The translations under genes and the position numbers were made by a program. A stretch of DNA of 64,000 bases from Mobula hypostoma (taxonomy: Eukaryota): contig NC_086116.1 of assembly GCF_963921235.1 (NCBI RefSeq), positions 51,336,001-51,400,000 of the forward strand, in the 5' to 3' direction. Under the pieces are notes generated by a model. The model was not told where the DNA came from and did no database searches. It was given only the letters and a program-made list of their open reading frames with translations. Shown piece by piece: positions 25,637 to 62,330 of this stretch. How positions within the stretch are numbered: position 1 is the first letter of the stretch; the number at the start of each line of letters is the position of its first letter.

Positions 25637-25775
25637 TCAGCACAGTGGGTTGTGGAAATGTGTCATGTGAATTTCTGTGGGTCCGACCTCCTGTGAATGT
25701 TCACTCCGATTCTTCCCATCAGTAAGGTCCTTGGTTTCCACAGGGTCCAAGAGTTCCTTAAAACTGGCCCTGTTT
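25637..25775 (-). CDS. Unidentified gene, last coding exon r
   Basis: cctcttcacag|(R)NRASFKELLDPVETKDLTDGKNRSEHSQEVGPTEIHMTHFHNPLC*; phase 2. Confidence 0.83.
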
Positions 25776-26002
25776 CTGTGAAGAGGTGAAAGAGTAACAG
25801 CTACAAACCCTTTAAAACTCAGCTCATGCTCTCCAACCTCACACATCATGCTTTTCATCCCTAAGCCCTCACACTCAACCATTCAAATATATCTCACAGC
25901 CCCTCCCTCAGCCTCAACTCCGAAGCTCTACCTCTGATCTCCCAACATCAGCTCAAATCTTCAGTCCCCACATAACCATTTCTCATCCCTCAAAACAACA
26001 GG

Positions 26003-26262
26003 TTACAGCTCGGGCCATTCTGGAGTTCGGAGTTCAACTCTGGCACCATCTGTACGGAGTTGATACGTTCTCCGCACATGAAGCATGTGTGTTTCTGCTA
26101 GTGTTCCAGTTTCATTCCACAGTCCAAAGATATACCAGTTGGTAAGCTCATCAGTTACTGTAAGTTGTCCCATGATTAGGCTGGTGTTGAATAGGTGGGT
26201 TGCTGGGTGGTGCGGCTCATTGGCCCAGAAGAGCCTGTACCGTGGTGTATCTCTAAATAAGC
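26003..26262 (+). mobile_element. tRNA-derived SINE (HE1/V-SINE-like)
   Basis: B-box-like GAGTTCAACTC and core CCACAGTCCAAAGA. Related minus copy at ~53690-53800. Confidence 0.55.
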
Positions 26263-26552
26263 CACTCATTCTTACCCATCAACACAACTCCCACTGTTAC
26301 TTTTATACCTCATCTGTCATTAAACTCACTCTAAACCCCTCACTAATTTATCCCATTATTGCCCCCACTACCACCATTGTAAATTTCCACCCTTTCTCAT
26401 TCCCAGACTCCATCCCCTATACCTCCATCAGTCCCTCCTCACTCCTCAATGTCCCTCAACATCACTGCTGTTTCAACTCCATCCTTTGCTTCACCCTTCA
26501 TGTCCACTCAACTCCAGTTCCTCACTTTCCAATTAAATGGATGATTTCTTAC

Positions 26553-26641
26553 CGTTCACCTTTTGATCTTAGAATGAAGGTACGTTCTTGTCGAAGTTGC
26601 TCCAATGTTTCTCTGACTCTAGTCCTCCAATGTTCAGATTC
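26553..26641 (-). CDS. Unidentified gene, exon q
   Basis: catgttag|ESEHWRTRVRETLEQLRQERTFILRSKGE(R)|gtaaga; phase 0/2. Confidence 0.83.
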
Positions 26642-28039
26642 CTAACATGGGACACAAAAAGACACTGTAATTCCCAGAACATGGAGTCATACTGAAGGGT
26701 TGAATGAGATCTACTGGGAGCGGTAAAGGGAGTCAAGGAGTGAAGAGATGTCCTGGATTAGGTGAATCAGGAATGAGGGAATAGAAGGGGACTGGGAGAG
26801 TGTGGGGGCTGGAGAAGTGAGGTTGTCAGATACGGTAATTGATCCAGAGAAATGTGAGGGATTTAGGAGACTGAGAGACCCAGGTATGACTGTTTAGAGA
26901 CACCAGTCAGTCAGTCCAACCCTCTAGTTTTTTGACTCTAGGGCTACTTTTGTAGAGGGGGGGTGGTGATTGGACTAACAGTCCAGCAATATGCTCACAT
27001 TTCATCCAAGTAGCTAGGAATTTAAATTAAGTAAATCTGAAATAAATTGCCAGTATTAGTGATAATGAAGATAAATCTACCACATTATTATAAAGACCCA
27101 TTCAGTTCACAAGTGTTCTTCAGAGAAGAAATTCTGTCAAACTTACATACTAGCCGATTTGGTTGACGTTTAACTGTCATATTAAACACTGAACAAACAA
27201 CTTACTTGCAGCAAAGATACAAAGTGGACCAGCTGGCATTGACCTAAGCATCTGCTTTAAGATGCTCAAAGGCATCAGGTAATCAGGTAAGCTCTAGCTC
27301 CCTAACGCTTAGAATGTCCCAGAACTGAGAATTGTCCCAGAGACTTGTCACGCCTGGCATTCAACCTCTATCATGATTCTTGGACACATCTTGTGCTCCC
27401 AGGGGTATGCAGTTGGCAGCTTGTGACCCAGAAATATTCCACGTTTGGGTCTGTGACCCATTGAGGAGAACAATGCCAAACATGACAGAGGACATCTCTG
27501 TGGATATATAATGTTTTCCCTTAGCTGATGCCTTGGTGCTCTTTGTTGTTGAACAACACATGGAAGAAGTATTATGAGGTAAAAAATGACTTCGATGTCC
27601 ATTAACATGGATCACTTGGAGAACCTACATGGATCACTTGGAGTACCAACATTTACAAATTTTGCCAAGTACTGAAGGACATATTTGTCAGAATAGGGCA
27701 GAGGGAGATTGTGAGAGAATCTATATGGAAAAATATTTACTTGAAAATTATTATGTTACGGATATAATTGTCCATATATGAAAGGTAGGAATGAACATCA
27801 CTCAGTCCTCAAGTATGTTATGGCTTTTCATACCATACACACCATTGCAACACTCTGCTCAGTAGGATACAATCAAACAGACATAGTTACCGTGCATGAG
27901 AACTATGGCCATCAGCAGCAGAATTTTATTCCATCACAATGTAACCTAATTGGATCAAAAGATCCTCACTCTAATGTTAACAACAAGATCAAGGAACATA
28001 GCTTTGAAAAATGGAGTGGAGAGCGCACAAGAGCACCCG

Positions 28040-28295
28040 AGTAATCCGGTATGTTTTCTCTACAAGGGGAGGGAGGGAACGTCGACTTAGACCATGAGAG
28101 GCCTGCGTCAGGCATTTTCATGCCTTACAAGGTGCAGATTGGAAGTCTGTGTGGGACGCCACTCCTCGCACAGACACTAGAGCAATGTGTGGTTAAGTAC
28201 CTTGCTCAAGGACACAAACACGCTGCTACAGCTGAGGCTCAAACTAGCAACCTTCAGATCACTAGACGAATGCCTTAACCACTTGGCCACGTGCC
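28040..28295 (-). mobile_element. V-SINE-like element
   Basis: Minus strand has tRNA head GTGGCCAAGTGGTTAAGGC (A box), a decayed B box, then GTGTCCTTGAGCAAGGTACTTAACC (V-domain-like). Confidence 0.65.
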
Positions 28296-29944
28296 CAACA
28301 CAAAATCTCTACAAAATCACAGGCAAATCCAATCCAGTCATCAATCTAAATCTTCTCCAAAGTAATGGCAGTGCTATCAACAACACCTACCAACAACCTG
28401 CTCACTTTTGCTCAATTTGCTTCAGAACTTATTACGTCTTTGGTATAAAGATAGATAAAAAGGCTGAGTTCCCATCATACAAAGAGTTAGAGGACATATT
28501 GTACGGAAACTTCAGCAGTAAGGCTCCACCAAAGCCTCATCAAGTCTTTCCCCATCTAAATCTATCAACGCACCCTTTCTTATCTTTTCCCTTGTGTACA
28601 TGTTCTGCCTGCTCTTAAATGTATCTTTTCCAATTGCTTCAGCGACACCCTGCGATAGAGTTCCACATTCTCACTGCTCTGTTAGGAAGTTATTTCAAAT
28701 TCGTCTTGTGTTGATTGACTCCAATTCTGCCCTTTCCTGTGTGAAATATTATCTCAGTATTCACTCCATCAAAACTTTAATAATTTTAGAAATCTCTATC
28801 AGGTCATTCCTTTTACCTTCTCTTCTTGAGAATGAGATCCAGTCTGTTCATCCTTTCCTGAAGTGAATCCTTTTGTATTCCTCCATTGTCTCTATATTAT
28901 TTTATAATACATAGCCCAGAACTATATAGTACAAGTATGGCTTAGTCAAGTTACCATAAATTATAGTGTAACTTCCCTATTTTTCTGTTCTGTCCCTTTA
29001 GAAGTGAATTCTAATGCTTGTTTTCTTTAAATCTTTAAAGCCTGTTTTACAATTTTTACTGGCTCATGTATCTGTACTGGGAGATTCCTTTGTTCCTCCA
29101 ACTCCTGGTCTGCACTTTCCAAGGTAAGGTGGGACTAATATCAAGGCAACATTTGACTGAAAATGGCAACAGTGAGCCCATGCAAGACTGAAGGGAACTG
29201 GTGTCAGGGAAAAATGAAACAAAATGGTTCTGGCTTTTGGAAGCCTTTTCATCCCCAAGAAATCCATGTGGAGTTCTCCAGGGAAGTGTCCAAGACCAAA
29301 CTATCATTAGCTGCTTACTCAATATTATGCTTCCTGCAAAGGTGAGGATATTTGTGAATCATGCAATGTTCAGATCCATTTGCAATTCCTTAGTCAATAA
29401 GGCCTGTGTACAGTCCAACTTGGGCTACATTCATAAGTGACAAGTTACAATAGTGCCATAAAATTGCCAGGCAGTGAATAGCCACCTGCAGCGAGAGTGT
29501 CTAACCATCAGCCATACAATGGCCAAATCATTGACCACCAACACCTTGACCAAAAGCCTAATAAGATCAACCAGTCACACGTGCATTATAGTTATAAGAT
29601 GTCCAAAGCCTTCTACAAGAAAAAAAAGTGTGATGGAATATTTTCTCTTGTTTGGATGAATGCATCTCTTGAAAGTTCAATGTCTTCCAGTAAAGGTGAG
29701 CCTGCTTGATTGACTATCATCCTAAAGATTCACCATATCCATTCCATTTGCAGGTGGCTGCAATGTTTCAATGTAATAGAATTATTTGTCAAGGACTTTT
29801 TTTTGACTATATCTCCAAAAACTGTGACCTCTACAACCTGGAAGGACAGATATCGCAAAAGACTACCATCTGTCACTCACCATCCTAACTTGTCCCTTTT
29901 CATAATGGTTGAAAACTTACAAATTCACAGTCTAATGTAGTTCA

Positions 29945-30760
29945 TAATCAAAGTCAATGTGCACTTATTATCAAAGAATGTATAAATTATACAGCCTCAA
30001 GATTTGTTTGCGTAACAGGCAGTTGCAAAGCAAGGAATCAGATTAACTGTTAAATAAAAATAAGGCCAACCCCCAGTGCCCACAGAGAAAGAGGAGAAGA
30101 AATCAAAACAAATCATGCAAACAACAGAAGTGAGCGACAACAAGAGCATTCCGAACCAAAATTGAGTCCTTAAATCCAAATCCCTGGAGCAGCTCAGAGT
30201 AGGCCCAAAGCCTCAGTATTCAGTCCATCATACTAGCAGGGAAATCACTGCAAAGTCTGCAGACATGAAGCACAGCAGCCAAGGCAGTCTCACAGCCTTA
30301 TGGTTGTAGAGAGAGGAACCCCAAGATATCTGGGCCAGCGTTGAAATTATCTGAACCTTGTACTAGGAACAGGGCCCAACTGTGACGAATCGCTCTGGGC
30401 TTAGATTTCACTGCTGGAGAAGCCATTCTTGACCTGTTCAAATCGGCTCGGCGCTTAGAGTGATCCACCCTCGCACCCGAGCAAACAACCTCATCCAACA
30501 CTTTCCAGTCTATCTGGGCCGGTGTTTAGATTGTCCAAGCAACATATTGTACTTTGCATTAGGACCCAGGTATCGCCGTGATGATTTAGAACATGGTGCC
30601 CAGCGATTCATTTTGGAGCTGGGTTTCACTGCTGAAGAAGCCGTTCTCAACCTCTCCAAATTGGCCCAGTGCTTAGAGTAATCCACTCTTGCACCCGGGT
30701 TAGTTGGAAGGGCATTAGAACTCCTCTGTCCCATCTTCTCCCCTCTGAATTGTCCATTCC
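29945..30760 (-). mobile_element. Family B non-autonomous retroelement, second copy
   Basis: Shares TTATTATCAAAG..TAAATTATAC..GAGATTTG and TTCCGAACCAAAA blocks with 17355-18345. Contains an internal ~215-bp duplication. Confidence 0.6.
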
Positions 30761-31850
30761 AACCAGCACAATGGAGTGTGTTCAGCTCATGGACTGCTAT
30801 GGTTGAAGATTAAGGCTAACTCTCCCTCCCTTGAAGGATTGGGCCAGTTGGCAGATGAAGTATAATATAGGAAAATGCAAAAAAAATGTCTATTTATAGG
30901 AATCATAGGAAACCAGGGTGCTTTAATGAAATGCAAGAGTTTTGTGTGTTATTATTCAAAGAGTCTAGAGTGTCTATGTACATGAGGTTGCAATCAATGA
31001 ACATGTAGACAAGAACAGTGTTTTTGTCTTTAGTACAGAGATTGGTGAATAAGAGAGGCAAGTCTGGTGAAAATCCACAATTAGAGTGCATAGTTTTGTT
31101 TTTTTTTAATCCAAGAAAGGAAGGAATTAAGAATTGTTGGATCCCTTCTCAAGATGAGTGGGTTTTCCAGTTAGTAAGACTGAATGTTGGGCGTATGTTC
31201 CCTGCAGTTTATAAGAATGAGAGATACTAATTGAAATTTATATCTTTAAAGAGGACTTGACTGGGTAAGTGTCGAGAGCCTTAAAAGGAGGCATCAACTT
31301 GATATGGGATGTGGGACAAGTGACCTAAAACAATGAGGTTAGTGAATGAGGTTGAGACTGCAACGAGAGAATTGGGAAATAAAAATGGATGGACTTTAAT
31401 GGGTGATTAAGAGAATTGGATGGGTGGGCTTTGATGTAGTCGTTGGGATGATGAATTTCCCCACTTACTTACAAAGTTGAATTGTCTGCTTCAAGGGATT
31501 GTGCATGTTTAGTCATTGACCGTATAAGAACACTGATCAGTGACTTCTGGGCATTGAGGAAATCAAGGATTTTTGGGAGGGTAGAAAACATATACAATAC
31601 AATACTCCTCCTAATCTCAAACAAAATCCCACCTCTTCAGAACCCTTATTTCAAGCAACAAAACCCAAATATTGTCATCAAAGATGATCCTGCCTGACCT
31701 GTTCTTGTCCCATTCACGCCCTTTCCTCTGTGCCACCTAACAGCCTATGGGCACCTCTCTCTGCATTCCAGATGTATTGGAGGGGCTGTGCAGTCGCACA
31801 ATTGCTGGGTACCGTGAACTGTTTTCTCTTTGTAGTTCATGATATCTCAC

Positions 31851-31952
31851 CTCGTGCAAATAGGTATTGTGAACGACTTGTCCACAGGTCTGAGGGAGTG
31901 GTCTGTCAAGAGCAGATGCTCTGCTTTGGGCAATGGAAAGACCCTCCTGTAC
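31851..31952 (-). CDS. Unidentified gene, exon p
   Basis: ccttctcccatccag|VQEGLSIAQSRASALDRPLPQTCGQVVHNTYLHE|gtgaga; phase 0/0. Confidence 0.8.
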
Positions 31953-32783
31953 CTGGATGGGAGAAGGCGAGAGATAATGATTAGGGGGCAGTGAGTCAGA
32001 GATTGATATTGAATAGCTAAATTTACAGGGCGTAAAATAACAAGAACATTGAACAATGAGCATGGGTTCTCAGCCAAACAAGGGAGAACAGGAGGCAAAG
32101 GGCCTTGAGTAGCAATGTAATCTGAACACTGGGGAGCTGGGCTACACACTTCTGTTTCTGGAATCATGTACTGGAGAGCATACTGACTCCACTGATAGTG
32201 GAGGGATACACATGAATGATTTAAATGAATAGCCAATTTTTTTCTGTGCTTCAGATCTGCGCATCAGGTGTGAATATTGATTCCCTTCGCTGGCTGAGTT
32301 GAAGAAATGCCAGGATGTGCCTGACCCTAACCTCAGCCCTGGAGATCATAGGTCATGAGGTCAGATGGAGTTGCCTGAGATATTGGTTTATGCCCTAGTT
32401 TTAAAGCCAGCTGTAGTTTGTAAAGCTGGGATGGAAGGAGTCCAGGACCCTTTGAGAAGGCGCAAAGCTCATAGTATAAGGAGCAAGGCAACAAAAATAA
32501 TTTAACACAAACAGCACCCTGTGACCCTTCCAACTGGCATGCTCCAGGGCCTAGCTCTTGATAATTAGCCCATACCCTCTATTCTGCTTCTTTGTGTGAA
32601 ATACTCTGGGTCCTGAGGCAGAGAATTTCTGCCCTAACTTTTATACCTTGGAAGTGTGCAAGGGTGACAAATTCTTCATCTCAGATACTTCTGAGGGAGC
32701 AATGCTGGGAATGGTCCACGAGTCTGGCTGCTGTGTTCTGGTGATTGCTTATTTAATCTGTGTCCCAGTTCGGAGCCACTTAC

Positions 32784-32927
32784 CCGCAGTGCTTGCCTCT
32801 CCTTGTCTCTCCTTCGCTTCTCTTCAGCTTTCCTCTGAACATGCGCCAGGCTCCTCAGGACGTTCATCTTCTCCTCATCTGATAGTAATATCATGTTCAA
32901 CTCATTGCGAGGGCCAGCTATGCGAGG
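32784..32927 (-). CDS. Unidentified gene, exon o
   Basis: tctctgcag|PRIAGPRNELNMILLSDEEKMNVLRSLAHVQRKAEEKRRRDKERQALR|gtaagt; phase 0/0. Confidence 0.85.
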
Positions 32928-32997
32928 CTGCAGAGATAACAGTCATCCCTCAAACCCTCAACGCAAACGACCAGAGGACGACTAAGTTATGGCAGGG

Positions 32998-33410
32998 TAC
33001 ATAGAATACTCCAGTACAGTGTAGGCCTTTTGGTCCACAATGTTGTGCTGACCTTTTAACCTGCTCTAAGATCAATCTAACCCTTCCCTCCTACTTAACC
33101 CTCCATCTTTCATTCATCCAAGAGATTTTAAATGCCTCTAACTCTTCTACCACCACACCTCCTATACTTTTCCTTAATCACCTCAAAATTATATCCCCTG
33201 GTACTAGCCATTCCACCTTGGGAAAATGTCTGGCGATCCACTTGATATATGCCCCTTATCACCATGTACAGCTCTATCGAGTCGCCTTTTATCCTCCGTA
33301 GCTCCAAATAGAAAAGCACTGGCTCGCTCAACCTGTTCTTAAATCCATGCAGCATCCTGGTAGATCTCCTCTGCACCTTCTCAAAAGTTTCTACATCCTT
33401 CTTATAATGA
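32998..33410 (-). mobile_element. CR1 3' fragment
   Basis: PHYKKDVETFEKVQRRSTRML motif and CR1 3' UTR. Confidence 0.7.
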
Positions 33411-34239
33411 GGCCCAATGTCAACACAGAGGGTATGCAATCTGCTCCCTCTCCACTGCAAGAGCCTCATATTATAAACAGTCTCTGCCTATTCTCACATC
33501 CTCAGCTTGCATTTCTATGTTACATTCTCTGCTTTGTTCATGTTCCTCCCACAACCGCTGGACTAAACACTAAAGTGGACTGAGATTTATGGTGGATAGA
33601 GTCACAACCAGCAAAAGAAACAGTTTGTAAAAATGTCACACTCCCAGAAAATATCACTAGCGAGAGATGTTCAGTAGATGGATATGCTTTGCACAATTCC
33701 CTGCATTCTGTGTGGGGGCGGTTTATTTTTTAAAAATTTAATGGCTGTGGTTAAAAATGCCGTGACCATGGAAACACCAGCACTGATCAACATTTCCAAG
33801 AAGTTAAGTGAATGTGCTACTAAAGGCCATAATATGGTATAAGATTAATGATTACCAAGTGAGACCTGGGTTAATGGACGAGAATCAGCACCTTGAGAAA
33901 TAGTGGGTTGAAATTCAAAGCAAAATATTAATGCTAAATTTGCGGACCTTAGTCACAGCAAACATCACATGGCTAAGGAATTTCACACTGGGTTTCGAGT
34001 CCTATGCTGGAAGAGGTTGTTCATGTCAGCCCACCCAGAATCACCTTTCTGCACTGCGTTTGCCTCAACTTTGCTAAAAACCATTCAACCCAGATGTGAA
34101 AGTGTGTCCCCAATAAACAGTTTGCAATGGCCAGTAGATCTGAATAACAGAAACATAGAAACATAGAAAATAGGTGCAGGAGTAGGCCATTCGAAACTGA
34201 GCATTCAAAATGGTATTGAGTGAAAGTTCAAGAGTGAGA

Positions 34240-35402: not shown

Positions 35403-35594
35403 CAGGTCTCTGGGCTTTGAATCAGTCTCCTCTCCTATATTTTGCTGCTCTTGCATCAGATCTTGCTCCTCTTTATACTTGGCTTTCACTGAGACTTGGT
35501 CCAGTAGAAAATTCAGTCCAATTTCCTCCTGCTGTGATTGGTTAGAAGAAATCTGTAACATTTGTTCTCCGTTCTGGGCCACAGAAATGGGATC
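35403..35594 (-). CDS. Unidentified gene, exon n
   Basis: ctcttgaaag|DPISVAQNGEQMLQISSNQSQQEEIGLNFLLDQVSVKAKYKEEQDLMQEQQNIGEETDSKPRDL|gtgaga; phase 0/0. Confidence 0.75.
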
Positions 35595-40166: not shown

Positions 40167-40346
40167 CAGTTCTCTAGGCTCTGGATCTGCCTCCTCCTCT
40201 AGGCGCGGTTGATCTCTCACCAAGCCTCCTTGTGCATCACATACCTCACACTTGACATTTGTTGAAACATCGTCATTTGGAATTACCAGACCAATTTCTT
40301 CCTGGCTTTCTTCTTCCTCTACTTTCTGGACTTCTAAAACTGCTTC
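40167..40346 (-). CDS. Unidentified gene, exon m
   Basis: ttcttaaaag|EAVLEVQKVEEEESQEEIGLVIPNDDVSTNVKCEVCDAQGGLVRDQPRLEEEADPEPREL|gtagga; phase 0/0. An alternative in-frame donor GAG|gtatgt would end it at 40245. Confidence 0.68.
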
Positions 40347-40757: not shown

Positions 40758-40970
40758 CTTAGACGTCATGTCTGGTGAGATTTCAACCTGGCTGCTGTTA
40801 CCATGGCTCTGAGTGCCTCTCGGCTGCAGCTCGGATAAGCCATTGTTTGATCTTCCCGTGACTCTGGCTGTTTTGATCGTGTCACTTGAAGCAGCACCCC
40901 CTTCATTTTGCAATTCCTGGATGTCATCCATCCGTCTGACTTGCTGGGGAGTCCCAGATGTCAATTCATC
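40758..40970 (-). CDS. Unidentified gene, exon l
   Basis: ccttgcag|DELTSGTPQQVRRMDDIQELQNEGG...QVEISPDMTSK|gtgagt; phase 0/0. Confidence 0.78.
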
Positions 40971-41739: not shown

Positions 41740-41882
41740 CTGTGACAATTGTAAGTTATCGCGAGTTGCAGTTATTTCACCGGAAATGATTGTATCTCCT
41801 CTAACCTCGCAGGACATGTCCATCACCAATCCATCATCCATCCTGTCGTGGACTGCAACAGCAGCAGATCCCCAAGCTTGTC
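41740..41882 (-). CDS. Unidentified gene, exon k
   Basis: tctgacag|QAWGSAAVAVHDRMDDGLVMDMSCEVRGDTIISGEITATRDNLQLSQ|gtgagc; phase 1/0. An alternative phase-1 acceptor lies ~28 nt further in. Confidence 0.65.
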
Positions 41883-43209: not shown

Positions 43210-43336
43210 CCATTTGATCAATATCCATCTCCGGTGTAACTAGCCCCAGGAACATGGCTGCCAGGTTGTTGTAGTGTTGATTATTTCTCAGATCACTGTG
43301 TAGCGAGCAGTAAGTGTTGATGAGGTCATTCACAGA
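43210..43336 (-). CDS. Unidentified gene, exon j
   Basis: ttttgtttcag|SVNDLINTYCSLHSDLRNNQHYNNLAAMFLGLVTPEMDIDQM(G)|gtaatt; phase 0/1. Confidence 0.75.
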
Positions 43337-43990: not shown

Positions 43991-44353
43991 TGACACAGAG
44001 AATTCCAAAAGGGGATTTTCAGCATGAATCCATTACACTGAAGCCCCATGAACAGCAAAAAAGTGTGAAGTTGCTTTAGACGTATCCAGAAGTCTGGATT
44101 GAATAATTGAAAGTTCAAAGTTCAAAGTAAAATTTATTACCAGAGTACATACATGTCACCACATACAACCCTGAGATTCTTTTTTCTGCGGGCATACTTA
44201 GCAAATCTACAGAACGGTAACTGTAAACTGTAAACATCAGGAACTGTTAACTGTAAACAAACTGCAGATATAAATAAATAGCAATAAATAACAAGTATGA
44301 AATAAAAATATTTCAGCGACCTTAAATGAGTGTAGCTATACCCTTTTGTTCAA

Positions 44354-48012: not shown

Positions 48013-48189
48013 CTGCCCCTCCATCTGTTGGGTCAGTTGCTGGACTCTGGTCAGCTGCATGAGGTGTAGTTCCATAAGCCCCACAATGGCTGGGCTTTGA
48101 CTCTTCGACTGCACTGTGATCTCCTTCTTTTGACAGTAGAGAATAAAAGCTTCCTCCAAGAGCTTGGGCTGAAGGTAGCCATTCTCAAC
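48013..48189 (-). CDS. Unidentified gene, exon i
   Basis: gccttag|VENGYLQPKLLEEAFILYCQKKEITVQSKSQSPAIVGLMELHLMQLTRVQQLTQQMEGQ|gtgaga; phase 0/0. Confidence 0.8.
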
Positions 48190-50692
48190 CTAAGGCCAAG
48201 AGATTCTTATATCACACAATATCAGAAATTCACATTGAAGAAAGCTACTTGGGCCCTCTTGGCCCATCAAACCCTCCACTCTCTCACTGCAAAATCCATT
48301 TTGGTTTTTGCGGCCTCTGCTCTTGCCAGCAATTGATGTACCACTTCCTGATGTTAATGAAATTGAACTCCTTCCACAAAACGTTGGATAAATCCAGTCC
48401 AGCCCTTGTAACCTCTTGAGCATTAGCAAAGTAATGGTAGATATCAGCAGTGCTACTTACAACTACCTTAAATGCCAGTGCTCAGAGTGTACACTGCAAT
48501 GATCAGTCAGTCCCAGATCTAACTGCAGCCTTAGCCCAAACATGGACAAAAGGAGGTCAATTCCAAGGGTGAAGGGTCTGTGACCAGCAAAACAGATAAA
48601 TGAAAGTTATGCATGCACCATGTAAGTACTAGGCAATCTCCTAGTGGGAATCTGACCACTAGCTCTTAATATTCAATGATATTACCATGCCCATGAAGCC
48701 CTGATTTCAACACCTGGATGCCACCAATGACCAGAAACTTAACTAGATAGTCACACATGTGCAAACATTTGTATTTTGTCTATAAAAGCAGCTTAAAAGT
48801 TTGGTACTCAGGGTTAATTCATTAAAGCCTTTCCATCAAATCAAAAGTGGGACAGGATATTCTCCAACCTCAAACAGAGCAGCTCAAAGAATTCAACAAT
48901 TCCAGCATAAAGCATGTTCTACATACTTCCATGCTTGTGAATGAAATATATTACATTGAAGAAAATCACAGAAGCTTCTTTGACAATACCTCACGAACCT
49001 GTGACCTCCAGTACTGGAAGGATAAGGGCAGTATAAGGATGGGACCCCAACAAGTGCAAGTTTCTTTTGCCAGATTCACGCCTTTCACTGCTGCATGGAC
49101 TTTGGCCATTTAAGGTAGTAGCTTACCACCACCTTTTTAAACGCTATTAGAAATGGAAACTGATCGCTGGCCTTAGACTGTGGTGCCCATAGACCATGAG
49201 TGAACAATAACAACCTCCACAGCAGAATAGCCTGTTAATCCAGCAGCTAAATAATAGTGTCTCTTGAAGAGTATTCATGCACATAGAGCATAGAACAAAG
49301 AAGCTTACAGCACAGTACAGGCCCTTCAGCCCACAATGTTGTGCCCACTTTTTAACCTAATTGAAGATCAACCTAACCCTTCTCTCCTAATCGTGCCAGG
49401 CCGCAGATTAAATTTTTGAAAATGTCTCCCATTAGCAGTAACATCCAAGGAAGAGAAGATAATTACCGATAAGTTACTTACACCCATGAGGTCTCCTGGT
49501 TTGCTTGATGCGAGATTTACCCAGTTATTATTCTGGCTGTTAACAGCAGCACCGCTAAATGAAAACTTCTCTGCGCAAGGGTCATTAGATGGCATCATCT
49601 GCTTGTAAATAAACTGCAGCAGCAACTATTATCAAAAGAAATTTTAAATAAAGGTTGAAGAATTTAAACGACTCTTTGATGAAGTATCCTGATTATTCCA
49701 CAGTATTAAGAGCGAAATAGTAAGGCAGAGATGAAGTTTCCTCTGCAGTGCCATTATCTTAACTCAGACTAAAGCTGCTTCTACTCTGCCCATTAATCTG
49801 TCAGGCAGAGCAGCCCGGATTAGATATAGAAACAGAATCAGAATCAGGTTTATTATCACCGGCATGTGTTGTGAATCTGTTAACTTAGCAGCAGCAGTTC
49901 AATGCAATACATAATATAGAAGAATAAATCAATCAATCAGTCGATCAATCAATCAATATAGGGTATAGCTCCTACTATACAGTCTGAACAAAACTTCTCA
50001 GAGCAGCACACAGGAGATTAGAAACAGAGTAAAGATCCCTATAAACCAATAAAATACTTTGTGGGTAAATGGAATATGACGCCATGGTGCTCCTAATGCA
50101 AACTGACAGTACAAAATGAGACGAAAATAAAAACAAGAATAAAGATACATTATTGAACGACCCTTGGCCTTAAGCGTTGACCATGTTTCTCCCCATGGGC
50201 GCTGCCCAATCTATAAAGAGCAGAGCATTTTCAGATTTTGTTTCAGATTTGCAGCAGCTGCATCTCTAAACAGGAGTGATGCTTTGTCTTTAGTGTAACA
50301 CTGGGCTTGGCACAAGGGAGTTCAAGTTTAAGCTCTTTCACAATGAATAGGGAAAATGAATGCTGTGCGGATTCCCAATGAATAATACGATTGACATCCT
50401 GAGGCTGGATGGGCAAAGCACATCAAGGATGATGGGGACAACCTTATCTAACAATTGAACACGAACAATGGACAGGCATTCACCCTAAGGGATGGCTGTA
50501 CATGGTACCCTAGATTTGAACGGACTGTGAATTCCAGTGTGCATTCTACCTTAAGGATGGATGTGGTTTGCCCATCAAAGAAATGTACAACTTTAAAACA
50601 GTCACACTAATATAGACTCTAATATTGTCAATATCATTTATTTGCAAGAGTACATTGTAGTAGATAGAATCATGTTAGAGATGGTGACTTAC

Positions 50693-50885
50693 TGATTGTT
50701 CCTCATGGTGATTTTTACATAACTGTTCCAGAATCATCTTCTGGATGTGGATCCTCCCCAGCAATGCTAATGCCTTGGGGTCACAGGCTGTGATCACGGA
50801 CTGCTTTCGTTTCCGATCAGCGATTGTGCAGATGAAATCCTGGAGCTGGCTCACCGCTAACATTTCGTTCCTGCCTTCACACAAC
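50693..50885 (-). CDS. Unidentified gene, exon h
   Basis: tttttccaag|LCEGRNEMLAVSQLQDFICTIADRKRKQ...ALALLGRIHIQKMILEQLCKNHHEEQS|gtaagt; phase 2/0. Confidence 0.8.
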
Positions 50886-51321
50886 CTTGGAAAAAGTTAT
50901 TCCAACAGCGTTAGGTTTTCAAGTATCATGCAGTTGGACTTGTTCATAAAATACCATCTCCTCAATCCTCTCTCTGTATCCCAATCATCTCCCACTCTTT
51001 GGATGCTAGTCTCCTCTGATTGCTACTCTCTCTCTTTCATTGAACCTAATCTCAGGGCTTCCCTGTTGTGGATTCAAATCCCCTCATAATCTATTAATCT
51101 ACCTCTGCCTTTACCCTTACCCTTATATCTACTTCAACCTCAGTTTTATTTATATTCTCAAAGTTTTTAATCTGCATTTGTTGCACATTTTTAACCAATC
51201 TTGAAACCACAGCAGGAGTGCCTACCCAACATCCAGAGCTTGGATATCTTTGGCCATCCACATTAAGGTCTTGCCTCTATACTTGGCCTGATTAACGTTG
51301 CAATGTCTATGATTCACGTAC

Positions 51322-51538
51322 TGTGGAGATTCAACACTCTTCTTCCAGTCAGCGAAACCCAACACAAGTGCTGCAGTTTCAAACGTGTCCTGGCTCTGGG
51401 CCTGGCATTGCAGGTAGTGCTGGGAGAGGAAGACCCGGGTCCTCTGTACTGGAGTCATTGGTGTGGACAAAATGGAAGACATTTCATGCTCACAGCATCG
51501 GTGCAAATCCAGGAGCAGTGACAGCAAACTGGACATTT
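51322..51538 (-). CDS. Unidentified gene, exon g
   Basis: ttcattctcag|(E)MSSLLSLLLDLHRCCEHEMSSILSTP...TAALVLGFADWKKSVESP(Q)|gtacgt; phase 1/2. Confidence 0.8.
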
Positions 51539-51864
51539 CTGAGAATGAAAGCAGAAGGTGTTTAGTGACACAGAGGGATCAGCTTCCAATCTCTGAAACC
51601 AAACTTAACCCACCCTTTAACCATGGAGCCCATCCTCAACTCTGATCAAGATACAAGTGATACAAGAATGACACAAGTGGTGGGCAAATTTTTGTCAACA
51701 TCCTTATTAAATGTTAATGAAATAAATGCGTAAGTGTACAGAACCTAAAAGAGACAAGCAGATATCGCATTAAGAGGGAGGAGTAAGGCGGGTATTCCTG
51801 GAAGAGAAGTGACCGTGTCTGTAAAGCAATAAGATTGCACACACTGGAATTCAGAACTGTAAAG

Positions 51865-52502: not shown

Positions 52503-52668
52503 AATCCCTAACCTCCTCTTCACCCCAAACCATTTTCAGTATCACCCTCTGTTGTAAAATCCCTAACCTCCCCTTCACCCCAAACCATTTTCAGTATCAC
52601 TCTCTGTTGTAAAATCCCTAACCTCCCCTTCACCCCAAACCATTTTCAGTATCACCCTCTGTTGTAAA
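52503..52668. repeat. 55-bp tandem repeat, 3 copies
   Basis: CCCTAACCTCCCCTTCACCCCAAACCATTTTCAGTATCACCCTCTGTTGTAAAAT starting at 52506, 52561 and 52616. Confidence 0.92.
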
Positions 52669-52863: not shown

Positions 52864-53036
52864 CCCAATGTTTCTGTAGCCTCTTTTGATGGAGTTGTTG
52901 AACAAGCATTTGGTACTTCTGCTCCACCAACTGCAGAAGGTGTGATTTTGACACGACATCCTTGCCCTCAGGACGCAGACATTCCATATCCTGTCCATCA
53001 TCATGAATGACAGCAGAGACTCCGCCTATTGCCCAC
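52864..53036 (-). CDS. Unidentified gene, exon f
   Basis: ttgttgtag|WAIGGVSAVIHDDGQDMECLRPEGKDVVSKSHLLQLVEQKYQMLVQQLHQKRLQKHW|gtatgg; phase 2/1. Confidence 0.8.
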
Positions 53037-53427: not shown

Positions 53428-53513
53428 CTGGTGCTGACTCGGTGCCGCTCCTGCATCACGTGACTGAGACCCTGGAGCCGAGCCTTCAGACTGTCCAGTT
53501 CAAACCTACCGAC
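53428..53513 (-). CDS. Unidentified gene, exon e
   Basis: ttttacag|VGRFELDSLKARLQGLSHVMQERHRVST(R)|gtgagt; phase 0/2. Confidence 0.8.
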
Positions 53514-54459: not shown

Positions 54460-54624
54460 TTTCCGTCCCATCCACACTTTATGCATCCGCATCATTTGCG
54501 GTGGCTGCGGGTGCCGCCTCGTATTCACCGATTTCTGATTCTCGTTACAAGGTGGATCCAGGGACTCTGGCAGTGGCAGAAGATCCCAACTCCAGCAACT
54601 CAGCATCTGAACGTTCCACAGAAG
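54460..54624 (-). CDS. Unidentified gene, exon d
   Basis: ctgcag|LLWNVQMLSCWSWDLLPLPESLDPPCNENQKSVNTRRHPQPPQMMRMHKVWMGRK|gtaagt; phase 0/0. Confidence 0.75.
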
Positions 54625-54784: not shown

Positions 54785-56520
54785 ACATAGAACATAGAAT
54801 AGTACAGCACAGTACAGGCCCTTCGGCCCACAATGTTGTGCCGACCCTCAAACCCTGCCTTCCATATAAGCCCCCACCTTACATTCCTCCATATACCTGT
54901 CTAGTAGTCTCTTAAACCTCACTAGTGTATCTGCCTCCAGCACTGACTCAGGCAGTGCATTCCATGCACCAACCACTCTATGAGTAAAAAACCTTCCTCT
55001 AATATCCTCTTTGAACTTCCCACCCCTTACCTTAGAGCCATGTCCTCTTGTATTGAGCAGTGGTGCCCTGGGGAAGAGGAGCTGGCTATCCACTCTATCT
55101 ATTCCTCTTAATATCTTGTACACCTCTATCATGTCTCTTCTCATCCTCCTTCTCTCCAAAGAGTAAAGCCCTAGCTCCCTTAATCTCTGATCATAATGCA
55201 TACTTTCTAAACCAGGCAGCATTCTGGTAAATCTCCTCTGTACCCTTTCCAATGCTTCCACATCCTTCCTATAGTGAGGTGACCAGAACTGGACACAGTA
55301 TTCCAAGTGTGGCCTAACCAGAGTTTTATAGAACTGCATCATTACATCGCGACTCTTAAACTCTATCCCTCGACTTATGAAAGCTAACACCCCATAAGCT
55401 TTCTTAACTACCCTATCCACCTGTGAGGCAACTTTCAGGGATCTGTGGACATGTACCCCAAGATCCCTCTGCTCCTCCACACTACCAAGTATCCTGCTAT
55501 TTACTTTGTACTGTGCCTTGGAGTTTGTCCTTCCAAAGTGTACCACCTCACACTTCTCTGGGTGAACGCCATCTGCCACTTCTCAGCCCACTTCTGCATC
55601 CTATCAATGTCTCTCTGCAATCTTTGACAATCCTCTACACTATCTACAACACCACCAACCTTTGTGTCGTCTGCAAACTTGCCAACCCACCCTTCTACCC
55701 CCACATCCAGGTTGTTAATAAAAATCACGAAAAGTAAGGTCCCAGAACAGATCCTTGTGGGACACCACTAGTCACAATCCTCCAATCTGAATGTACTCCC
55801 TCCACCACCACCCTCTGCCTTCTGCAGGCAAGCCAATTCTGAATCCACCTGGCCAAACTTCCCTGGATCCCATGCCTTCTAACTTTCTGAATAAGCCTAC
55901 CGTGTGGAACCTTGTCAAATGCCTTACTAAAATCCATATAGATCACATCCACTGCACTACCCTCATCTATATGCTTGGTCACCTCCTCAAAGAACTCTAT
56001 CAGGCTTATTAGACACGATCTGCCCTTCACAAAGCCATGCTGACTGTCCCTGATCAGACCATGATTCTCTAAATGCCTATATATCCTATCTCTAAGAATC
56101 TTTTCCAACAGCTTTCCCACCACAGACGTATGGCTCACTGGTTTATAATTACCCGGACTATCCCTACTACCTTTTTTGAACAAGGGAACAACATTCACCT
56201 CCCTCCAATCCTCCGGTACCATTCCCGTGGACAACGAGGACATAAAGATCCTCGCCAGAGGCTCAGCAATCTCTTCTCTCGCCTCGTGGAGCAGCCTGGG
56301 AAATATTCCGTCAGGCCCCGGGGACTTATCTGTCCTAATGTATTTTTACAACTCCAGCACCTCCTCTCCCTTATTATCAACATGCTCCAGAACATCAACC
56401 TCACTCATATTGTCCTCACCATCATCAAGTTCCCTCTCATTAGTGAATACCGAAGAGAAGCATTCATTGAGGACCTCGCTCACTTCCACAGCCTCCAGGC
56501 ACATCTTCCCACCTTTACCT
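54785..56520 (-). mobile_element. CR1 LINE 3' 1.7 kb, same subfamily as 44354-46930
   Basis: ORFs 55725-56243, 55501-55728 and 54848-55579 are near-identical to the 44-47 kb copy; same tail. Confidence 0.92.
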
Positions 56521-56534
56521 TTACCATATATATA

Positions 56535-56894: not shown

Positions 56895-57148
56895 GTGAGG
56901 GGAACTGTACTCGGTGTCAGTGCCTGTGGAGCTGTACTCTGTGACTGTCAGCCTTGGGCAACTGTGCCCAGTGAGAGCCAGTGTCAGGGGAACTGTGTTC
57001 CAGTGAGAGCCAGTGTCAGGCGAACTGTGTTCCAGTGAGAGCCAGTGTCAGGGGAACTGTGCCCAGTGAGAGCCAGTGTCAGGGGAACTGTGTTCCAGTG
57101 AGAGCCAGTGTCAGGCGAACTGTGCCCAGTGAGGGTTAGTGTCAGGGG
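56895..57148. repeat. 31/32-bp minisatellite (~6 good copies plus decayed ones)
   Basis: Unit AACTGTG(CC/TTC)CAGTGAGAGCCAGTGTCAGG(G/C)G. Confidence 0.92.
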
Positions 57149-57242
57149 ATCAGCACACCGATGCGAGTCAGTATCTGCAGAAATGTTCCCAACTGAGTCA
57201 ATGTCCGGGGAAATGAACTGCAGTGAGAATTACATCTGATAC

Positions 57243-57332
57243 CTGCTCCAGTTGCTTTTGTCTTCTGTGCTGCTCCAACAGACTCTCCAGGAGAGTTTCA
57301 GGGTCACAGACTCCACTCATCTTGCTATACAT
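57243..57332 (-). CDS. Unidentified gene, exon c
   Basis: tttgtttggcag|MYSKMSGVCDPETLLESLLEQHRRQKQLEQ|gtatca; phase 0/0. Confidence 0.8.
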
Positions 57333-57379
57333 CTGCCAAACAAAAAGGAAAACAAGAGGTTTTACAACAAATATCCTCT

Positions 57380-59350: not shown

Positions 59351-60099
59351 CTGAATGACCCATTCCTGCTCCATTGTTTAATATTTTTTCATAACCTAGG
59401 GTGCAACTTTTCTGGACCAGATAACCTCTTTAATATCAACCTGTTTAATTTTATTACTTTCAATAATACCACTGCCTTCTCCTTTGCTTACACATAAGCA
59501 GCATCTTTTCTCCAGTGAAGACATAACTATTTGACTATTCTATTTCTTTTATTGGATCCACTTTATACTTTCCACGCATAGCTTTGTTTTCTATTCTGTT
59601 CTGCTCAGTTGTCATTAGCATTCTTCTCCTGTCTAGTTTGAATCTCTGTTAGTCATCAGGACAGATCTAGCTGTCAATATAATTCCTTGCTGCCCTTTTT
59701 GAAGATGAAACCCGCTTACGTAAATCCCCTCCTCTAGGAAGACTCCTACTATTCAATTGCAGTTTCATCCAATAATTTTCAATACCAATTCTCCTGTAAT
59801 TTAACAAGATTAGTTCTCTAATATTTAACTATTTTTGTACCTGACTGTACCTTGTATTTTTGTGAAAACTATCCAAACTCTGATGATATTTTGGTCACTC
59901 CTAACAAGGTGTCTCATTCCAATCTTGCAGTTCTTCCTTCCTCCTTGCCCGGTAATACAATAATCAAGATCGTTCTCATTGCCATCCTTCTACTGCACTG
60001 GCTCCCAATTTGTGACAACTTTATTTTCAAAGTTTTGAGATTTATTTACAAATCTGCCCCCTCTCCCTCAGTATTCTCTTCTATGCCTACAAACACCAA

Positions 60100-60316
60100 C
60101 ACACACAACATTCTGGAGGAACTTAGCAAATCAGGCAGCAACAACACAGACAAAATGCTGGAGAAAAGTCCTGATGAACGGCCTCCACCTGCAATGGCGA
60201 TGCCGGTCCCAGTGAAGGGTTTCCCCTCCATAGATGCTGAGTGACTTGTAGAGTTCCTCCAGCATTCAGTGGATGTTGCTCTGGATTTCCAGCATCTGCA
60301 GAATCTCTTGTGTCAG
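60100..60316. mobile_element. Fold-back Penelope-type insert, hammerhead partly lost
   Basis: Inverted arms CTGGAGGAACT / AGTTCCTCCAG. 10-bp target duplication CAAACACCAA at 60090-60099 and 60317-60326. Only AGTC-CTGATGA remains of the core. Confidence 0.65.
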
Positions 60317-60574
60317 CAAACACCAAGAGAGCTGTACTCTTCAATTCTGATCCCTTGCTCTTCAGTTGTTGGCCATTTCATCGGCTCTGAAATTTCCACT
60401 CTAAATCTCTTTGCTCTTCTTTAAAACGCTCTTCAAAACCTAACTCCTTGATCAATCTTTGATTGACCTGTTTAGAAACATCCTTTTGAGGCATGGGTTA
60501 CCTTTCTGCCTGGTTGCGTTCCTGTGAAATACTTAGGAATGTTTTAGTGTGTTCAGAGTGTTTCTTAAAATAAT

Positions 60575-60790
60575 GGTTGGAGGAAGAGGAGAGTTTCTGG
60601 GATTAGAGCAGAAAGAAGGGAAAGAAAAGAGGAATTAGAGGAGAAAGAGGAAGGAATTAGGAGAGAAGTAATTAGAAGACGAGGAGAAGGAATAAATATG
60701 AGGAAAATTAAGAAGTGAAGTTAGAGAGAAAAAAGAGGGGAGGATGTTTGAGGAGGTTGAAGTGGAAAAGGAGGAAGAGCAGAAGCCTGT
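60575..60790. repeat. Purine-rich (GA) low-complexity tract
   Basis: About 200 bp composed mostly of A and G on the plus strand. Confidence 0.75.
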
Positions 60791-60872
60791 TTTTGTTTCT
60801 TACTGACATGCCCGCCACAAGTGGGATTGTTGCTGGGAAGAATTTACTAATTAAAAATGGTTATGATCTTAC

Positions 60873-61035
60873 CAGACTGAGCGCTCCTTGGACAAGCTGC
60901 AGTGAGATCGGCCCCTGACACAGGCACTGGTGGAACCTGAGAAGATCTTCTGCAGTCAAATCTTTCTGGAGTGCCATTTTCAGTACATCACAGCAAGCCC
61001 TGCATTCCAGTTCCATGCTTTCGGAACACTCCTCC
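60873..61035 (-). CDS. Unidentified gene, exon b
   Basis: accag|EECSESMELECRACCDVLKMALQKDLTAEDLLRFHQCLCQGPISLQLVQGALSL|gtaaga; phase 2/0. Confidence 0.75.
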
Positions 61036-61399
61036 CTGGTTTCATTCAAAATGAATGGATAAAGGAAAGAGTTAATTAGTTATGGGGGATGCTGAAGCAT
61101 CTTCATTCTTGGAGTGTAAAAGGTCACCTACTGATCTCTCTTCTCTAGATACCCAAGTCAAATCTAGATTCAAACAGGGCTGATATAAATACGGTATATA
61201 AGATGAAGGAGAATAAAAGTTAACTGCTGGCCTTTCTCCACCAGCTCCTGTTAACTCAGACAAGGCAGTGGATCGCAGGTTGTGTGGAAAGTCAGGGTGT
61301 ATGGTGGTGACTGAAATGACTGGATCAGCAATATCATAGTTATTTTGTAGGACAGACACATGTCCATGCTAACTATTGAGTCATTAATTCATTAATTCC

Positions 61400-61725
61400 T
61401 TGTTGTATGATGTGGATGATCCTGACCTTGATCATATTGTTCTAGGCAAATTTTTCTACAGAAGTGATATGGCATTGCCTTCTTCGGGGCAGTGTCTTTA
61501 CAAGATGGGCAACCCCAGTCATTATCAATGTTCTTCAGAGATTGTCTGGCTGGCGTCAGTGATCAGAATTTGTGATATGCACCACCTGCTCGCATGATTT
61601 CACGTGACCCTGATTGGGGAGGGGAGGGGTGCTAAGCAGGTGCTACACTTTGCCCAAGGGTGACCCGCAGGCTAGTGGAGGGAAGGAGCACCTTACACCT
61701 CCTTTGACAGAGACGTATCTCCATC
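61400..61725 (-). mobile_element. RTE-related non-autonomous element or SINE
   Basis: Minus strand GAAGAAGGCAATGCCATATCACTTCTGTAGAA resembles the RTE-derived GAAGGCAATGGCAAACCAC block of Bov-A and Sauria-type SINEs. Confidence 0.45.
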
Positions 61726-62214
61726 CTACTGCCCTTTAACTACTGAGAATGCATTTATTAATCCCATTTACCGGCACTTGTTCTGTAGCCATTAATGCAT
61801 TGGTGATTCAAGTGCTTCTTAAAAGGCTGCTCCCTCAGGTAATGCATTTCAGTATCCAACCACCCTCTGGGTGAAGAAAATTCTCAGCAAATTCCCTCTA
61901 AATCTCTTACCCCTGTACACTGCTATATGTATATCTTTTATACACTCCCACTACAATATATATCTTATCTTTGCTTCTCACGTTCTTTGTCAGTCCAAGA
62001 TGACCAATCTCACATTGACCTACATAGATATACATTTGCTAGTGTTTAACCTTATATTGATTAATATGTTCTTAAAATGTTCCTTTCTTTTAAACTTTCC
62101 TACAGTACCACCCACCCACCTTTCTAAGAGATTTTACCAAATGCCTTCTGAAAATCCACCTTGAAATTGCTTTCAATTTATAGAAATTCTTTGAAACATT
62201 GACATATCTCTCAC

Positions 62215-62330
62215 CAGGAGCCTGCGTAGACATGGAGAGGGATGGACATACTCTGAAAGCAGCAGGTGCTTTCGAAAAACTTTAAACACAAACTCGGAAG
62301 AGATGCAGCCGTGAAATGGCCAGATCTTCC
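62215..62330 (-). CDS. Unidentified gene, exon a (most 5' found)
   Basis: tcacag|GRSGHFTAASLPSLCLKFFESTCCFQSMSIPLHVYAGS(W)|gtgaga; phase 0/2. Confidence 0.6.

What the first reader, a model, noticed from the sequence alone, without database searches (positions are those of the whole stretch)
25637..62330. Unnamed gene of at least 902 aa and 18 exons, tail-to-tail with SPMIP1
Seen in sequence: 18 exons chain with matching phases (0,2,0,0,0,2,1,2,0,0,1,0,0,0,0,0,0,2 at the acceptors) into one stop-free frame, which is unlikely by chance. The ORF track does not show it as a unit. Architecture: ~500 aa of Leu/Gln/Cys-rich amphipathic helices, an acidic, probably disordered linker (exons k-n), and a charged helical C-terminus (EEKMNVLRSLAHVQRKAEEKRRRDKERQALRVQEGLSIA...RVRETLEQLRQERTFILRSKGERNRASFKELLDPV). 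I recognise no domain. From memory, the human gene on this side of ATP6V1F/SPMIP1 is KCP, a VWC-repeat protein, which this is not. Inference: an ancient gene lost or unrecognised in mammals; a sperm or cilia role is speculative.
Basis: partly seen in the sequence, partly recalled or inferred. Interest (0 to 1): 0.72.

Follow-up and report, generated by a model that had tools for sequence, protein, structure and literature searches.

The report
Conserved shark-and-ray gene, function unknown
This is a real, spliced gene for a protein of about 905 residues that rays, sharks and a chimaera all keep next to SPMIP1; databases list it only as 'uncharacterized protein', and its function is still unknown.

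Summary
The finding is real. On the minus strand, 18 coding exons (61035 to 25637, all GT-AG) encode about 905 aa. The product is 87% identical over 910 aa to a Hemitrygon akajei 'uncharacterized protein', and 40-57% identical to counterparts in skates, an electric ray and three sharks. Intron positions and phases are shared with Amblyraja and Stegostoma. SPMIP1 lies tail-to-tail downstream in every locus examined. An HMM of the family finds colinear exons at the same place in the chimaera Callorhinchus. dN/dS is 0.28-0.38 (C-terminus 0.18-0.26).

Spliced contigs from three runs join 25775 to 26553, exactly the predicted last junction.

- It missed the 144-nt exon 49625-49482.
- Its first exon (62330-62215) has no homology support.

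The window is Mobula hypostoma, whose annotation holds only a 137-aa fragment here.

No Pfam, PDB or fold match was found, and no homologue outside cartilaginous fishes. The core folds poorly in AlphaFold2 (pLDDT 35), whereas the C-terminus forms two confident long helices.

My best reading is a soluble helical scaffold with an acidic linker. A sperm or cilia role is unsupported, and 'lost in mammals' could not be tested.

The parts
62394..62422 (-). Homologue of the first coding exon of the Hemitrygon orthologue (reads I-SYERQLAL, donor gt after 62394). Probably 5' UTR in this genome.
   Evidence: Sequence compared with the N-terminus of P0023. ATA replaces ATG, and an in-frame TGA lies at 62455-62453. 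No RNA evidence was obtained for this exon.
62215..62330 (-).
   Evidence: Splice-site scan. No orthologue aligns here. It may be an alternative 5' exon or a chance open frame.
60873..61035 (-). Coding exon 1 of 18. Holds the likely start ATG at 61016-61014 (MELECRACC...).
   Evidence: Hemitrygon P0020 and Hypanus P0018 start at the same Met.
57243..57332 (-). Coding exon 2 (90 nt).
   Evidence: 87% identity to P0015.
54460..54624 (-). Coding exon 3 (165 nt). Poorly conserved outside stingrays.
   Evidence: 73% identity to P0015.
53428..53513 (-). Coding exon 4 (86 nt). The conserved core begins here.
   Evidence: Amblyraja has the same 86-nt exon; Stegostoma's is 89 nt.
52864..53036 (-). Coding exon 5 (173 nt; RWAIGGVSAVIHDDG motif).
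   Evidence: Amblyraja and Stegostoma have the same 173-nt exon. A Callorhinchus hit has E 9e-7.
51322..51538 (-). Coding exon 6 (217 nt).
   Evidence: Amblyraja and Stegostoma have the same 217-nt exon.
50693..50885 (-). Coding exon 7 (193 nt).
   Evidence: A Callorhinchus hit has E 1e-8.
49482..49625 (-). Coding exon 8 (144 nt, 48 aa).
   Evidence: All orthologues have it.
48013..48189 (-). Coding exon 9 (177 nt).
43210..43336 (-). Coding exon 10 (127 nt). The conserved core ends here.
   Evidence: Amblyraja and Stegostoma have the same 127-nt exon.
41740..41882 (-). Coding exon 11 (143 nt). The acidic linker begins here.
40758..40970 (-). Coding exon 12 (213 nt). Part of the linker, and aligned only with stingray orthologues.
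40167..40346 (-). Coding exon 13 (180 nt), acidic linker.
35403..35594 (-). Coding exon 14 (192 nt), acidic linker with the conserved SQSQQ motif.
32784..32927 (-). Coding exon 15 (144 nt). First conserved C-terminal helix, with the KRRRDKERQ stretch.
   Evidence: A Callorhinchus hit has E 2e-12.
31851..31952 (-). Coding exon 16 (102 nt).
   Evidence: The RNA contigs continue beyond exon 17 for a length that fits exons 16 and 15.
26553..26641 (-). Coding exon 17 (89 nt). Part of the second conserved helix.
   Evidence: Spliced contigs of three runs cover it.
25305..25775 (-). Coding exon 18 (25775-25637, stop TGA 25639-25637) plus at least 330 nt of 3' UTR.
   Evidence: The joint 25775|26553 stands in X8, X14 and X9, and contigs reach 25373 and 25305.

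Best explanation
SHOWN. This is a genuine, single-copy, transcribed and spliced protein-coding gene. It has 18 coding exons plus at least one 5' exon, spans about 37 kb on the minus strand, and encodes about 905 aa. It is the Mobula hypostoma member of an orthologous group that NCBI lists only as 'uncharacterized protein LOC...' in rays, skates and sharks. A diverged copy lies at the same place in the chimaera Callorhinchus. The gene has therefore been kept beside SPMIP1 since before the chimaera lineage and the shark-and-ray lineage separated. It is under purifying but rather relaxed selection.

INFERRED from the anatomy. The product is a soluble intracellular protein with no enzyme signature, no signal peptide and no membrane segment. 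It has:
- a Leu/Gln-rich helical core of about 400 aa;
- a weakly constrained acidic linker of about 230 aa (pI 4.3), probably disordered;
- two long, strongly conserved C-terminal helices, the first carrying a basic KRRRDKERQ stretch.

My best guess is that it works as a scaffold or adaptor. The core and the C-terminal helices would bind partners, the linker would be a flexible tether, and the basic helix might act as a nuclear-import or polyanion-binding (nucleic acid or microtubule) element. I put the scaffold reading at about 0.3 and any particular compartment at 0.15 or less. The figure of 0.85 below refers to the identity of the gene, not to its function.
For: - Gene model: 18 colinear HSPs. 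All introns are GT-AG and no frame is disrupted.
- Orthology: 87% identity over 910 aa to Hemitrygon, 54-57% to skates and Narcine, 40-49% to sharks.
- Gene structure: intron positions and phases are shared with Amblyraja and Stegostoma, whose coding sequences I threaded exactly onto their loci.
- Synteny: SPMIP1 lies on the opposite strand 2-7 kb downstream in Hemitrygon, Amblyraja, Stegostoma and the window.
- Callorhinchus: it has FLNC-like, ATP6V1F and SPMIP1, followed by minus-strand fragments. The family HMM hits these colinearly (E 9e-7, 4e-4, 1e-8, 1e-3, 2e-12, 0.02), while the reversed-sequence control gives nothing better than E 3.
- Selection (NG86): dN/dS is 0.38 against Amblyraja and 0.28 against Stegostoma. 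By region it is 0.25-0.32 in the core, 0.47-0.75 in the linker and 0.18-0.26 in the C-terminus.
- Transcription: spliced contigs join 25775|26553 (intron ends CT..AC on the + strand, which is GT..AG on the minus strand) in two runs of organism A and one run of a sister species. The contigs continue into upstream exons.
- Anatomy: the strongest 19-residue hydrophobic window scores only 1.15. The linker has net charge -26 and pI 4.25; the C-terminus has pI 8.7. AlphaFold2 gives two C-terminal helices of 46 and 50 residues at pLDDT 88-98.
Against: - Only one of the 17 junctions was seen in RNA in this species. The exon-6 words were held by no listed RNA run, so expression is low or restricted to certain tissues.
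- The 5' end and the start codon are unresolved.
- The core folds with very low confidence (pLDDT 35 with a 9-sequence alignment), so 'helical domain' rests on secondary structure alone.
- There is no hit to any domain, solved structure or fold, so the functional reading has no positive evidence.
- Self-association of the C-terminus gave no answer.
- In Heptranchias, nothing was found within 10 kb of SPMIP1.
Confidence: 0.85

Rival explanations
1. It is an ancient jawed-vertebrate gene whose orthologue in bony vertebrates exists under some name but has diverged beyond recognition. Alternatively, it was lost in bony vertebrates or mammals.
For: - The protein evolves fast (dN/dS 0.28-0.38).
- The chimaera copy was invisible to the exhaustive exon-6 HMMER search and appeared only in a targeted search of the syntenic locus. 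A blank in database searches therefore means little.
- The FLNC-ATP6V1F-SPMIP1 gene order is already present in Callorhinchus.
Against: - A profile search over 5.8 billion proteins found only elasmobranchs.
- There is no PDB or Pfam match.
- From memory, the human neighbour on this side is KCP, with nothing known in between.
Confidence: 0.3
2. It is a sperm, cilium or centrosome protein whose charged C-terminal helices bind microtubules. This would make it functionally linked to its neighbour SPMIP1.
For: - It has sat beside the sperm microtubule inner protein gene SPMIP1 since before the chimaera lineage split off.
- The nearest named ESM Atlas clusters for the C-terminus are CEP126 (K1377) and CEP295NL.
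- Fast evolution is common among reproductive genes.
Against: - The Atlas scores are 0.75-0.77. The tool states that shuffled proteins reach 0.8 a third of the time.
- Pfam K1377 does not match, even at E 10.
- Adjacency is not evidence of shared function.
- Spliced transcripts appeared at low depth in three of the four runs laid. That does not look like a single-tissue gene, although the tissues are unknown.
Confidence: 0.12
3. It is not a functional coding gene: a decaying pseudogene, or a non-coding transcript whose open frames arose by chance.
For: - NCBI annotates only a 137-aa fragment in this genome.
- NCBI splits the gene in two in Hypanus and in Callorhinchus.
- The start codon of the Hemitrygon-type first exon is lost here.
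Against: - The frame is intact over 905 codons and 17 canonical introns.
- dN/dS is well below 1, with the expected contrast between domains.
- The gene structure is conserved in species whose synonymous divergence reaches dS 1.2-1.4.
- The transcripts are spliced.
Confidence: 0.02

Closest known systems
NCBI gene models 'uncharacterized protein' LOC119973466 (Scyliorhinus canicula), LOC125463400 (Stegostoma tigrinum), LOC116985269 (Amblyraja radiata), LOC129707839 (Leucoraja erinacea), and the Hemitrygon akajei proteins XP_072922826-34
   Same: They are orthologues. They align over the full length at 40-87% identity, share intron positions and phases, and keep the tail-to-tail position with SPMIP1. 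All have the same three-part layout: helical core, acidic linker and two C-terminal helices.
   Different: These are computational predictions with no name, no domain and no study; no paper in the library cites their LOC ids. Stingrays, including this window, carry extra linker exons. Sharks carry an insert of about 90 aa between exons 5 and 6. The N-termini differ.
KCP (kielin/chordin-like protein), the gene on this side of ATP6V1FNB/SPMIP1 in human (from memory)
   Same: Only the position relative to SPMIP1.
   Different: KCP is a secreted protein built of Cys-rich VWC repeats and a VWD domain. The gene here has no signal peptide and no VWC or VWD match.
CEP126 (KIAA1377, Pfam PF15352)
   Same: A long protein with charged helical stretches. 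It is the nearest named cluster for the C-terminal 130 aa by language-model features.
   Different: The score of 0.77 is below the tool's noise level. There is no Pfam K1377 match and no alignable sequence, so this is a lead and not a relationship.

Membership tests
Cartilaginous-fish 'uncharacterized protein LOC119973466 / LOC116985269 / LOC125463400' orthologous group | Sequence similarity over the full length | tested here: met
   87.3% identity over 910 aa to Hemitrygon P0023, 55.9% over 835 aa to Amblyraja P0026, 54.3% to Narcine P0003, and 40-49% by segment to the shark proteins.
Cartilaginous-fish 'uncharacterized protein LOC119973466 / LOC116985269 / LOC125463400' orthologous group | Shared intron positions and phases | tested here: met
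   Thirteen boundaries coincide with Amblyraja, Stegostoma or both. Exon sizes 173, 217, 193, 127, 144, 102 and 89 nt are identical in all three, and 86, 177 and 139 nt also match Amblyraja. The one-column offset comes from my 3-nt slip in placing the ATG.
Cartilaginous-fish 'uncharacterized protein LOC119973466 / LOC116985269 / LOC125463400' orthologous group | Conserved position, tail-to-tail with SPMIP1 | tested here: met
   Hemitrygon; Amblyraja; Stegostoma; Callorhinchus; window.
Cartilaginous-fish 'uncharacterized protein LOC119973466 / LOC116985269 / LOC125463400' orthologous group | Intact reading frame under purifying selection | tested here: met
   no stop codon or frameshift; dN/dS 0.28-0.38 overall and 0.18-0.26 in the C-terminus.
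KCP / kielin-chordin-like | VWC repeats, a VWD domain and a signal peptide | tested here: not met
   Pfam finds no VWC or VWD in the exons or in five full-length orthologues. There is no hydrophobic N-terminus.
CEP126 (Pfam K1377, PF15352) | Match to the K1377 profile | tested here: not met
   No hit even at E 10. The Atlas feature score is only 0.77.
SPMIP1 / sperm microtubule inner proteins | SPMIP1 C-terminal domain (PF22589) | tested here: not met
   PF22589 is carried by the neighbouring gene and not by this protein.

The most novel reading that the evidence does not exclude
The family may be a true cartilaginous-fish invention, or an ancestral jawed-vertebrate gene kept only in that lineage. 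It would then be a protein of about 900 aa with a new helical core and no relative elsewhere, held at one chromosomal place since before chimaeras separated from sharks and rays.
Probability: 0.3. Interest if true: 0.45.

Novelty: new member of a known kind. Interest (0 to 1): 0.3.

Why it matters
In practical terms, this corrects an annotation. The Mobula hypostoma gene set holds a 137-aa fragment where a 905-aa gene lies, and Hypanus and Callorhinchus carry the same gene split in two.

In biological terms, it adds one well-supported case of a large, conserved, fast-evolving protein family with no domain and no known relative outside cartilaginous fishes. Such families are where lineage-specific biology may hide. 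Without expression or localisation data, though, it opens no long-standing question. Uncharacterised LOC genes of this sort are common in shark and ray genomes.

Tried and rejected
- A naive exon-chaining program using splice-site and amino-acid composition scores over-predicted 27 exons, including pieces of transposons. I dropped it in favour of homology-guided modelling.
- Pfam gave only noise below the cut-offs on single exons, on full-length orthologues and on the C-terminal alignment.
- Family profiles against PDB sequences gave only noise: LPXTG protein, designed Ika repeats and a cyclodipeptide synthase.
- The ESM Atlas gave no usable feature hit for the core, only bacterial membrane proteins at TM 0.37 or less on a poor model. 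For the C-terminus it gave CEP126 at 0.77, below noise.
- AlphaFold2 on the core with a 9-sequence alignment gave pLDDT 35, so I made no fold search with that model.
- Foldseek with the C-terminal two-helix model against AFDB Swiss-Prot gave E above 1 for every row.
- The homodimer test of the C-terminal helices returned 'no answer' (score 0.00). This counts neither for nor against binding.
- No RNA run held the exon-6 words.
- DNA of the Scyliorhinus canicula, Hemitrygon and Mobula loci could not be fetched because the files are too large. dN/dS therefore rests on Amblyraja and Stegostoma only.
- P0015 itself is not on record as a gene product.
- In Heptranchias, there was no hit within 10 kb downstream of SPMIP1. 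The gene may lie further away, so this does not show absence.
- Rfam found nothing in 25-63 kb.
- No paper cites the LOC ids.
- Bony-vertebrate SPMIP1 loci could not be reached.
Full report
**What is there.** No single exon matches a Pfam family.

I searched a library of 1.84 billion representative proteins exhaustively with HMMER, using the stop-free stretch around exon 6 (window 51225-51578, minus strand). Five of the seven hits were relatives: four proteins of 623-828 aa and one 172-aa fragment. The other two matched only the intron part of the query (see 'Seen in passing'). An exact look-up shows that the four long proteins are NCBI models called 'uncharacterized protein' from Rhinoraja, Narcine, Scyliorhinus canicula and Stegostoma; the fragment comes from Logan assemblies and has no name. 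Word-based searches added S. torazame, Hemitrygon akajei and Amblyraja. Cluster look-ups added Leucoraja, plus Hypanus sabinus, where the gene is split into two loci.

**Gene model.** tblastn with the Hemitrygon protein gives 18 colinear minus-strand HSPs at 54-97% identity. I then chose, for each junction, the donor and acceptor that keep the frame and align best. This gives 18 exons from 61035 to 25637. Every intron is GT-AG, the coding length is 2,739 nt, and the stop is TGA at 25639-25637. The product is 87.3% identical to Hemitrygon isoform X1 over 910 aa, 54-57% identical to skates and Narcine, and 40-49% identical by segment to sharks.

The arithmetic (950 - 48 = 902 aa) identifies it as 49625-49482, an exon that every orthologue has.

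The counterpart of Hemitrygon's first coding exon lies at 62422-62394. There it reads ATA instead of ATG, and an in-frame TGA lies upstream. The start is therefore most likely ATG 61016-61014, as in Hemitrygon isoform P0020 and Hypanus P0018, which gives 905 aa.

**Which genome, and what its annotation holds.** The neighbouring + strand gene encodes a protein that is 100% identical to Mobula hypostoma 'SPMIP1-like', so the window is from that species. ATP6V1F lies at 2.6-5.0 kb.

In the NCBI annotation of that genome, the only minus-strand gene beside SPMIP1 spans what corresponds to window 25640-32870 and yields 137 aa. That is the last four exons, read from an internal Met.

**Is it a working gene?** Three lines of evidence say yes.
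- *Structure.* I threaded the Amblyraja and Stegostoma proteins exactly onto their fetched loci. Thirteen intron positions, with their phases, coincide with those of the window. Exon sizes 173, 217, 193, 127, 144, 102 and 89 nt are identical in all three species, and 86, 177 and 139 nt also match Amblyraja.
- *Selection.* By the Nei-Gojobori method, dN/dS is 0.38 against Amblyraja (dS 0.57) and 0.28 against Stegostoma (dS 1.39). It is lowest in the C-terminus (0.18-0.26) and the core (0.25-0.32), and highest in the linker (0.47-0.75). This is purifying selection, but looser than for an average vertebrate gene.
- *RNA.* Contigs from two runs of organism A and one run of a sister species skip exactly 25776-26552. 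The intron ends read CT..AC on the + strand, which is GT..AG on the minus strand. The contigs then continue beyond exon 17 for a length that fits exons 16 and 15. Such contigs can only come from cDNA. Depth is low (5-7). An earlier look-up found no RNA run holding exon 6. The other 16 junctions are therefore inferred from homology, not seen in RNA.

**How old is it?** SPMIP1 (PF22589) lies on the opposite strand 2-7 kb downstream in Hemitrygon, Amblyraja and Stegostoma.

In Callorhinchus milii the locus reads FLNC-like, ATP6V1F, SPMIP1, and then two minus-strand models of 174 and 233 aa without Pfam families. tblastn and a family HMM hit that stretch in colinear order, at exons 5, 6, 7, 9, 15 and 17 (E 9e-7, 4e-4, 1e-8, 1e-3, 2e-12, 0.02). 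Reversed sequences give nothing better than E 3. The gene therefore predates the separation of the chimaera lineage from the shark-and-ray lineage.

In Heptranchias, nothing was found within 10 kb of SPMIP1, which is inconclusive. No locus from a bony vertebrate could be reached.

**What is the protein?** It has no signal peptide and no membrane segment. The layout is as follows:
- a weakly conserved, Cys-containing N-terminus;
- a Leu/Gln-rich core of about 400 aa;
- a linker of about 230 aa with pI 4.25 and net charge -26;
- a C-terminus with pI 8.7.

AlphaFold2 gives the core only helices, at pLDDT 35, so I made no fold search with that model. The C-terminal 174 aa fold into two helices of 46 and 50 residues at pLDDT 88-98, but their mutual arrangement is uncertain (pTM 0.29). 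Foldseek with that model finds nothing.

Pfam, PDB sequence profiles and the ESM Atlas give nothing usable. The CEP126 likeness of 0.77 is below the Atlas's stated noise level. A homodimer test of the helices gave no answer. No paper cites the LOC ids.

**Reading.** The identity of the gene is secure. Its function is not. The anatomy fits a non-enzymatic scaffold or adaptor:
- a helical core and two conserved helices that could serve as binding surfaces;
- an acidic flexible tether between them;
- a basic KRRRDKERQ stretch that could serve nuclear import or bind a polyanion.

I hold this at about 0.3. A sperm or cilia role has no evidence beyond the neighbouring gene. Whether bony vertebrates have an orthologue remains open. 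The chimaera copy was invisible to database-wide searches and appeared only in the syntenic locus, so a blank search means little.

**Seen in passing.**
- The introns hold several reverse-transcriptase open frames.
- There are three tandem arrays.
- One short repeat has very high RNA word depth.
- A conserved in-frame extension follows the exon 6 donor. It resembles a repeat motif, and one skate gene model includes it.

Noticed in passing
window 28000-28399 and 29800-29999: All four runs laid show a summed contig word depth of about 2,900-17,800 at 28.0-28.4 kb, and 37-578 at 29.8-30.0 kb. It comes from many short contigs (45-85 nt) at 95-99% identity that run on into unrelated sequence. This points to a dispersed, highly transcribed short repeat inside intron 16. 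Rfam finds nothing there.
   Followed up: partly
window 51226-51321 (minus strand, just after the exon 6 donor): The reading frame stays open for 32 codons beyond the donor, up to a weak in-frame GT at 51226. The Rhinoraja model P0001 includes a similar 20-aa insert here. The stretch also resembles a motif (HRHCRVEGARERGRPTRTW) that is repeated 7-8 times in two unrelated proteins, P0004 and P0007. It may be an old transposon fragment or an alternative donor.
   Followed up: partly
window 54851-56345 (-), 46141-46866 (+), 44326-44904 (+), 33131-33487 (-), 6026-6748 (+): Long open frames that look like reverse transcriptase (LINE-like) lie in the introns of the gene and upstream of SPMIP1. The copies at 54851-55582 and 46141-46866 are nearly identical in protein sequence but lie on opposite strands.
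   Followed up: no
window 56956-57149, 52503-52668, 45165-45345: Three intronic tandem arrays: period 32 (also 63 and 95) with 6.2 copies, period 55 with 3.0 copies at 97% identity, and period 58 with 3.1 copies.
   Followed up: no
window 2624-2917 and 4598-4966 (+): Exons of ATP6V1F (V-ATPase subunit F) lie upstream of SPMIP1 on the same strand. Callorhinchus and Heptranchias have the same ATP6V1F-SPMIP1 order.
   Followed up: partly
Hypanus sabinus LOC132404306 + LOC132403641; Callorhinchus L003 13203-17404 and 18511-20789: The same gene is split into two separate gene models in the NCBI annotations of Hypanus (502 + 330 aa) and Callorhinchus (174 + 233 aa). In Callorhinchus, a 'SHHSNTITGSATH' tandem repeat follows exon 7 in frame.
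   Followed up: partly
window 25640-24800 (minus strand, downstream of the stop): There is no AATAAA or ATTAAA within 840 nt after the stop codon. RNA contigs end at 25373 and 25305, so the poly(A) site is undefined.
   Followed up: no
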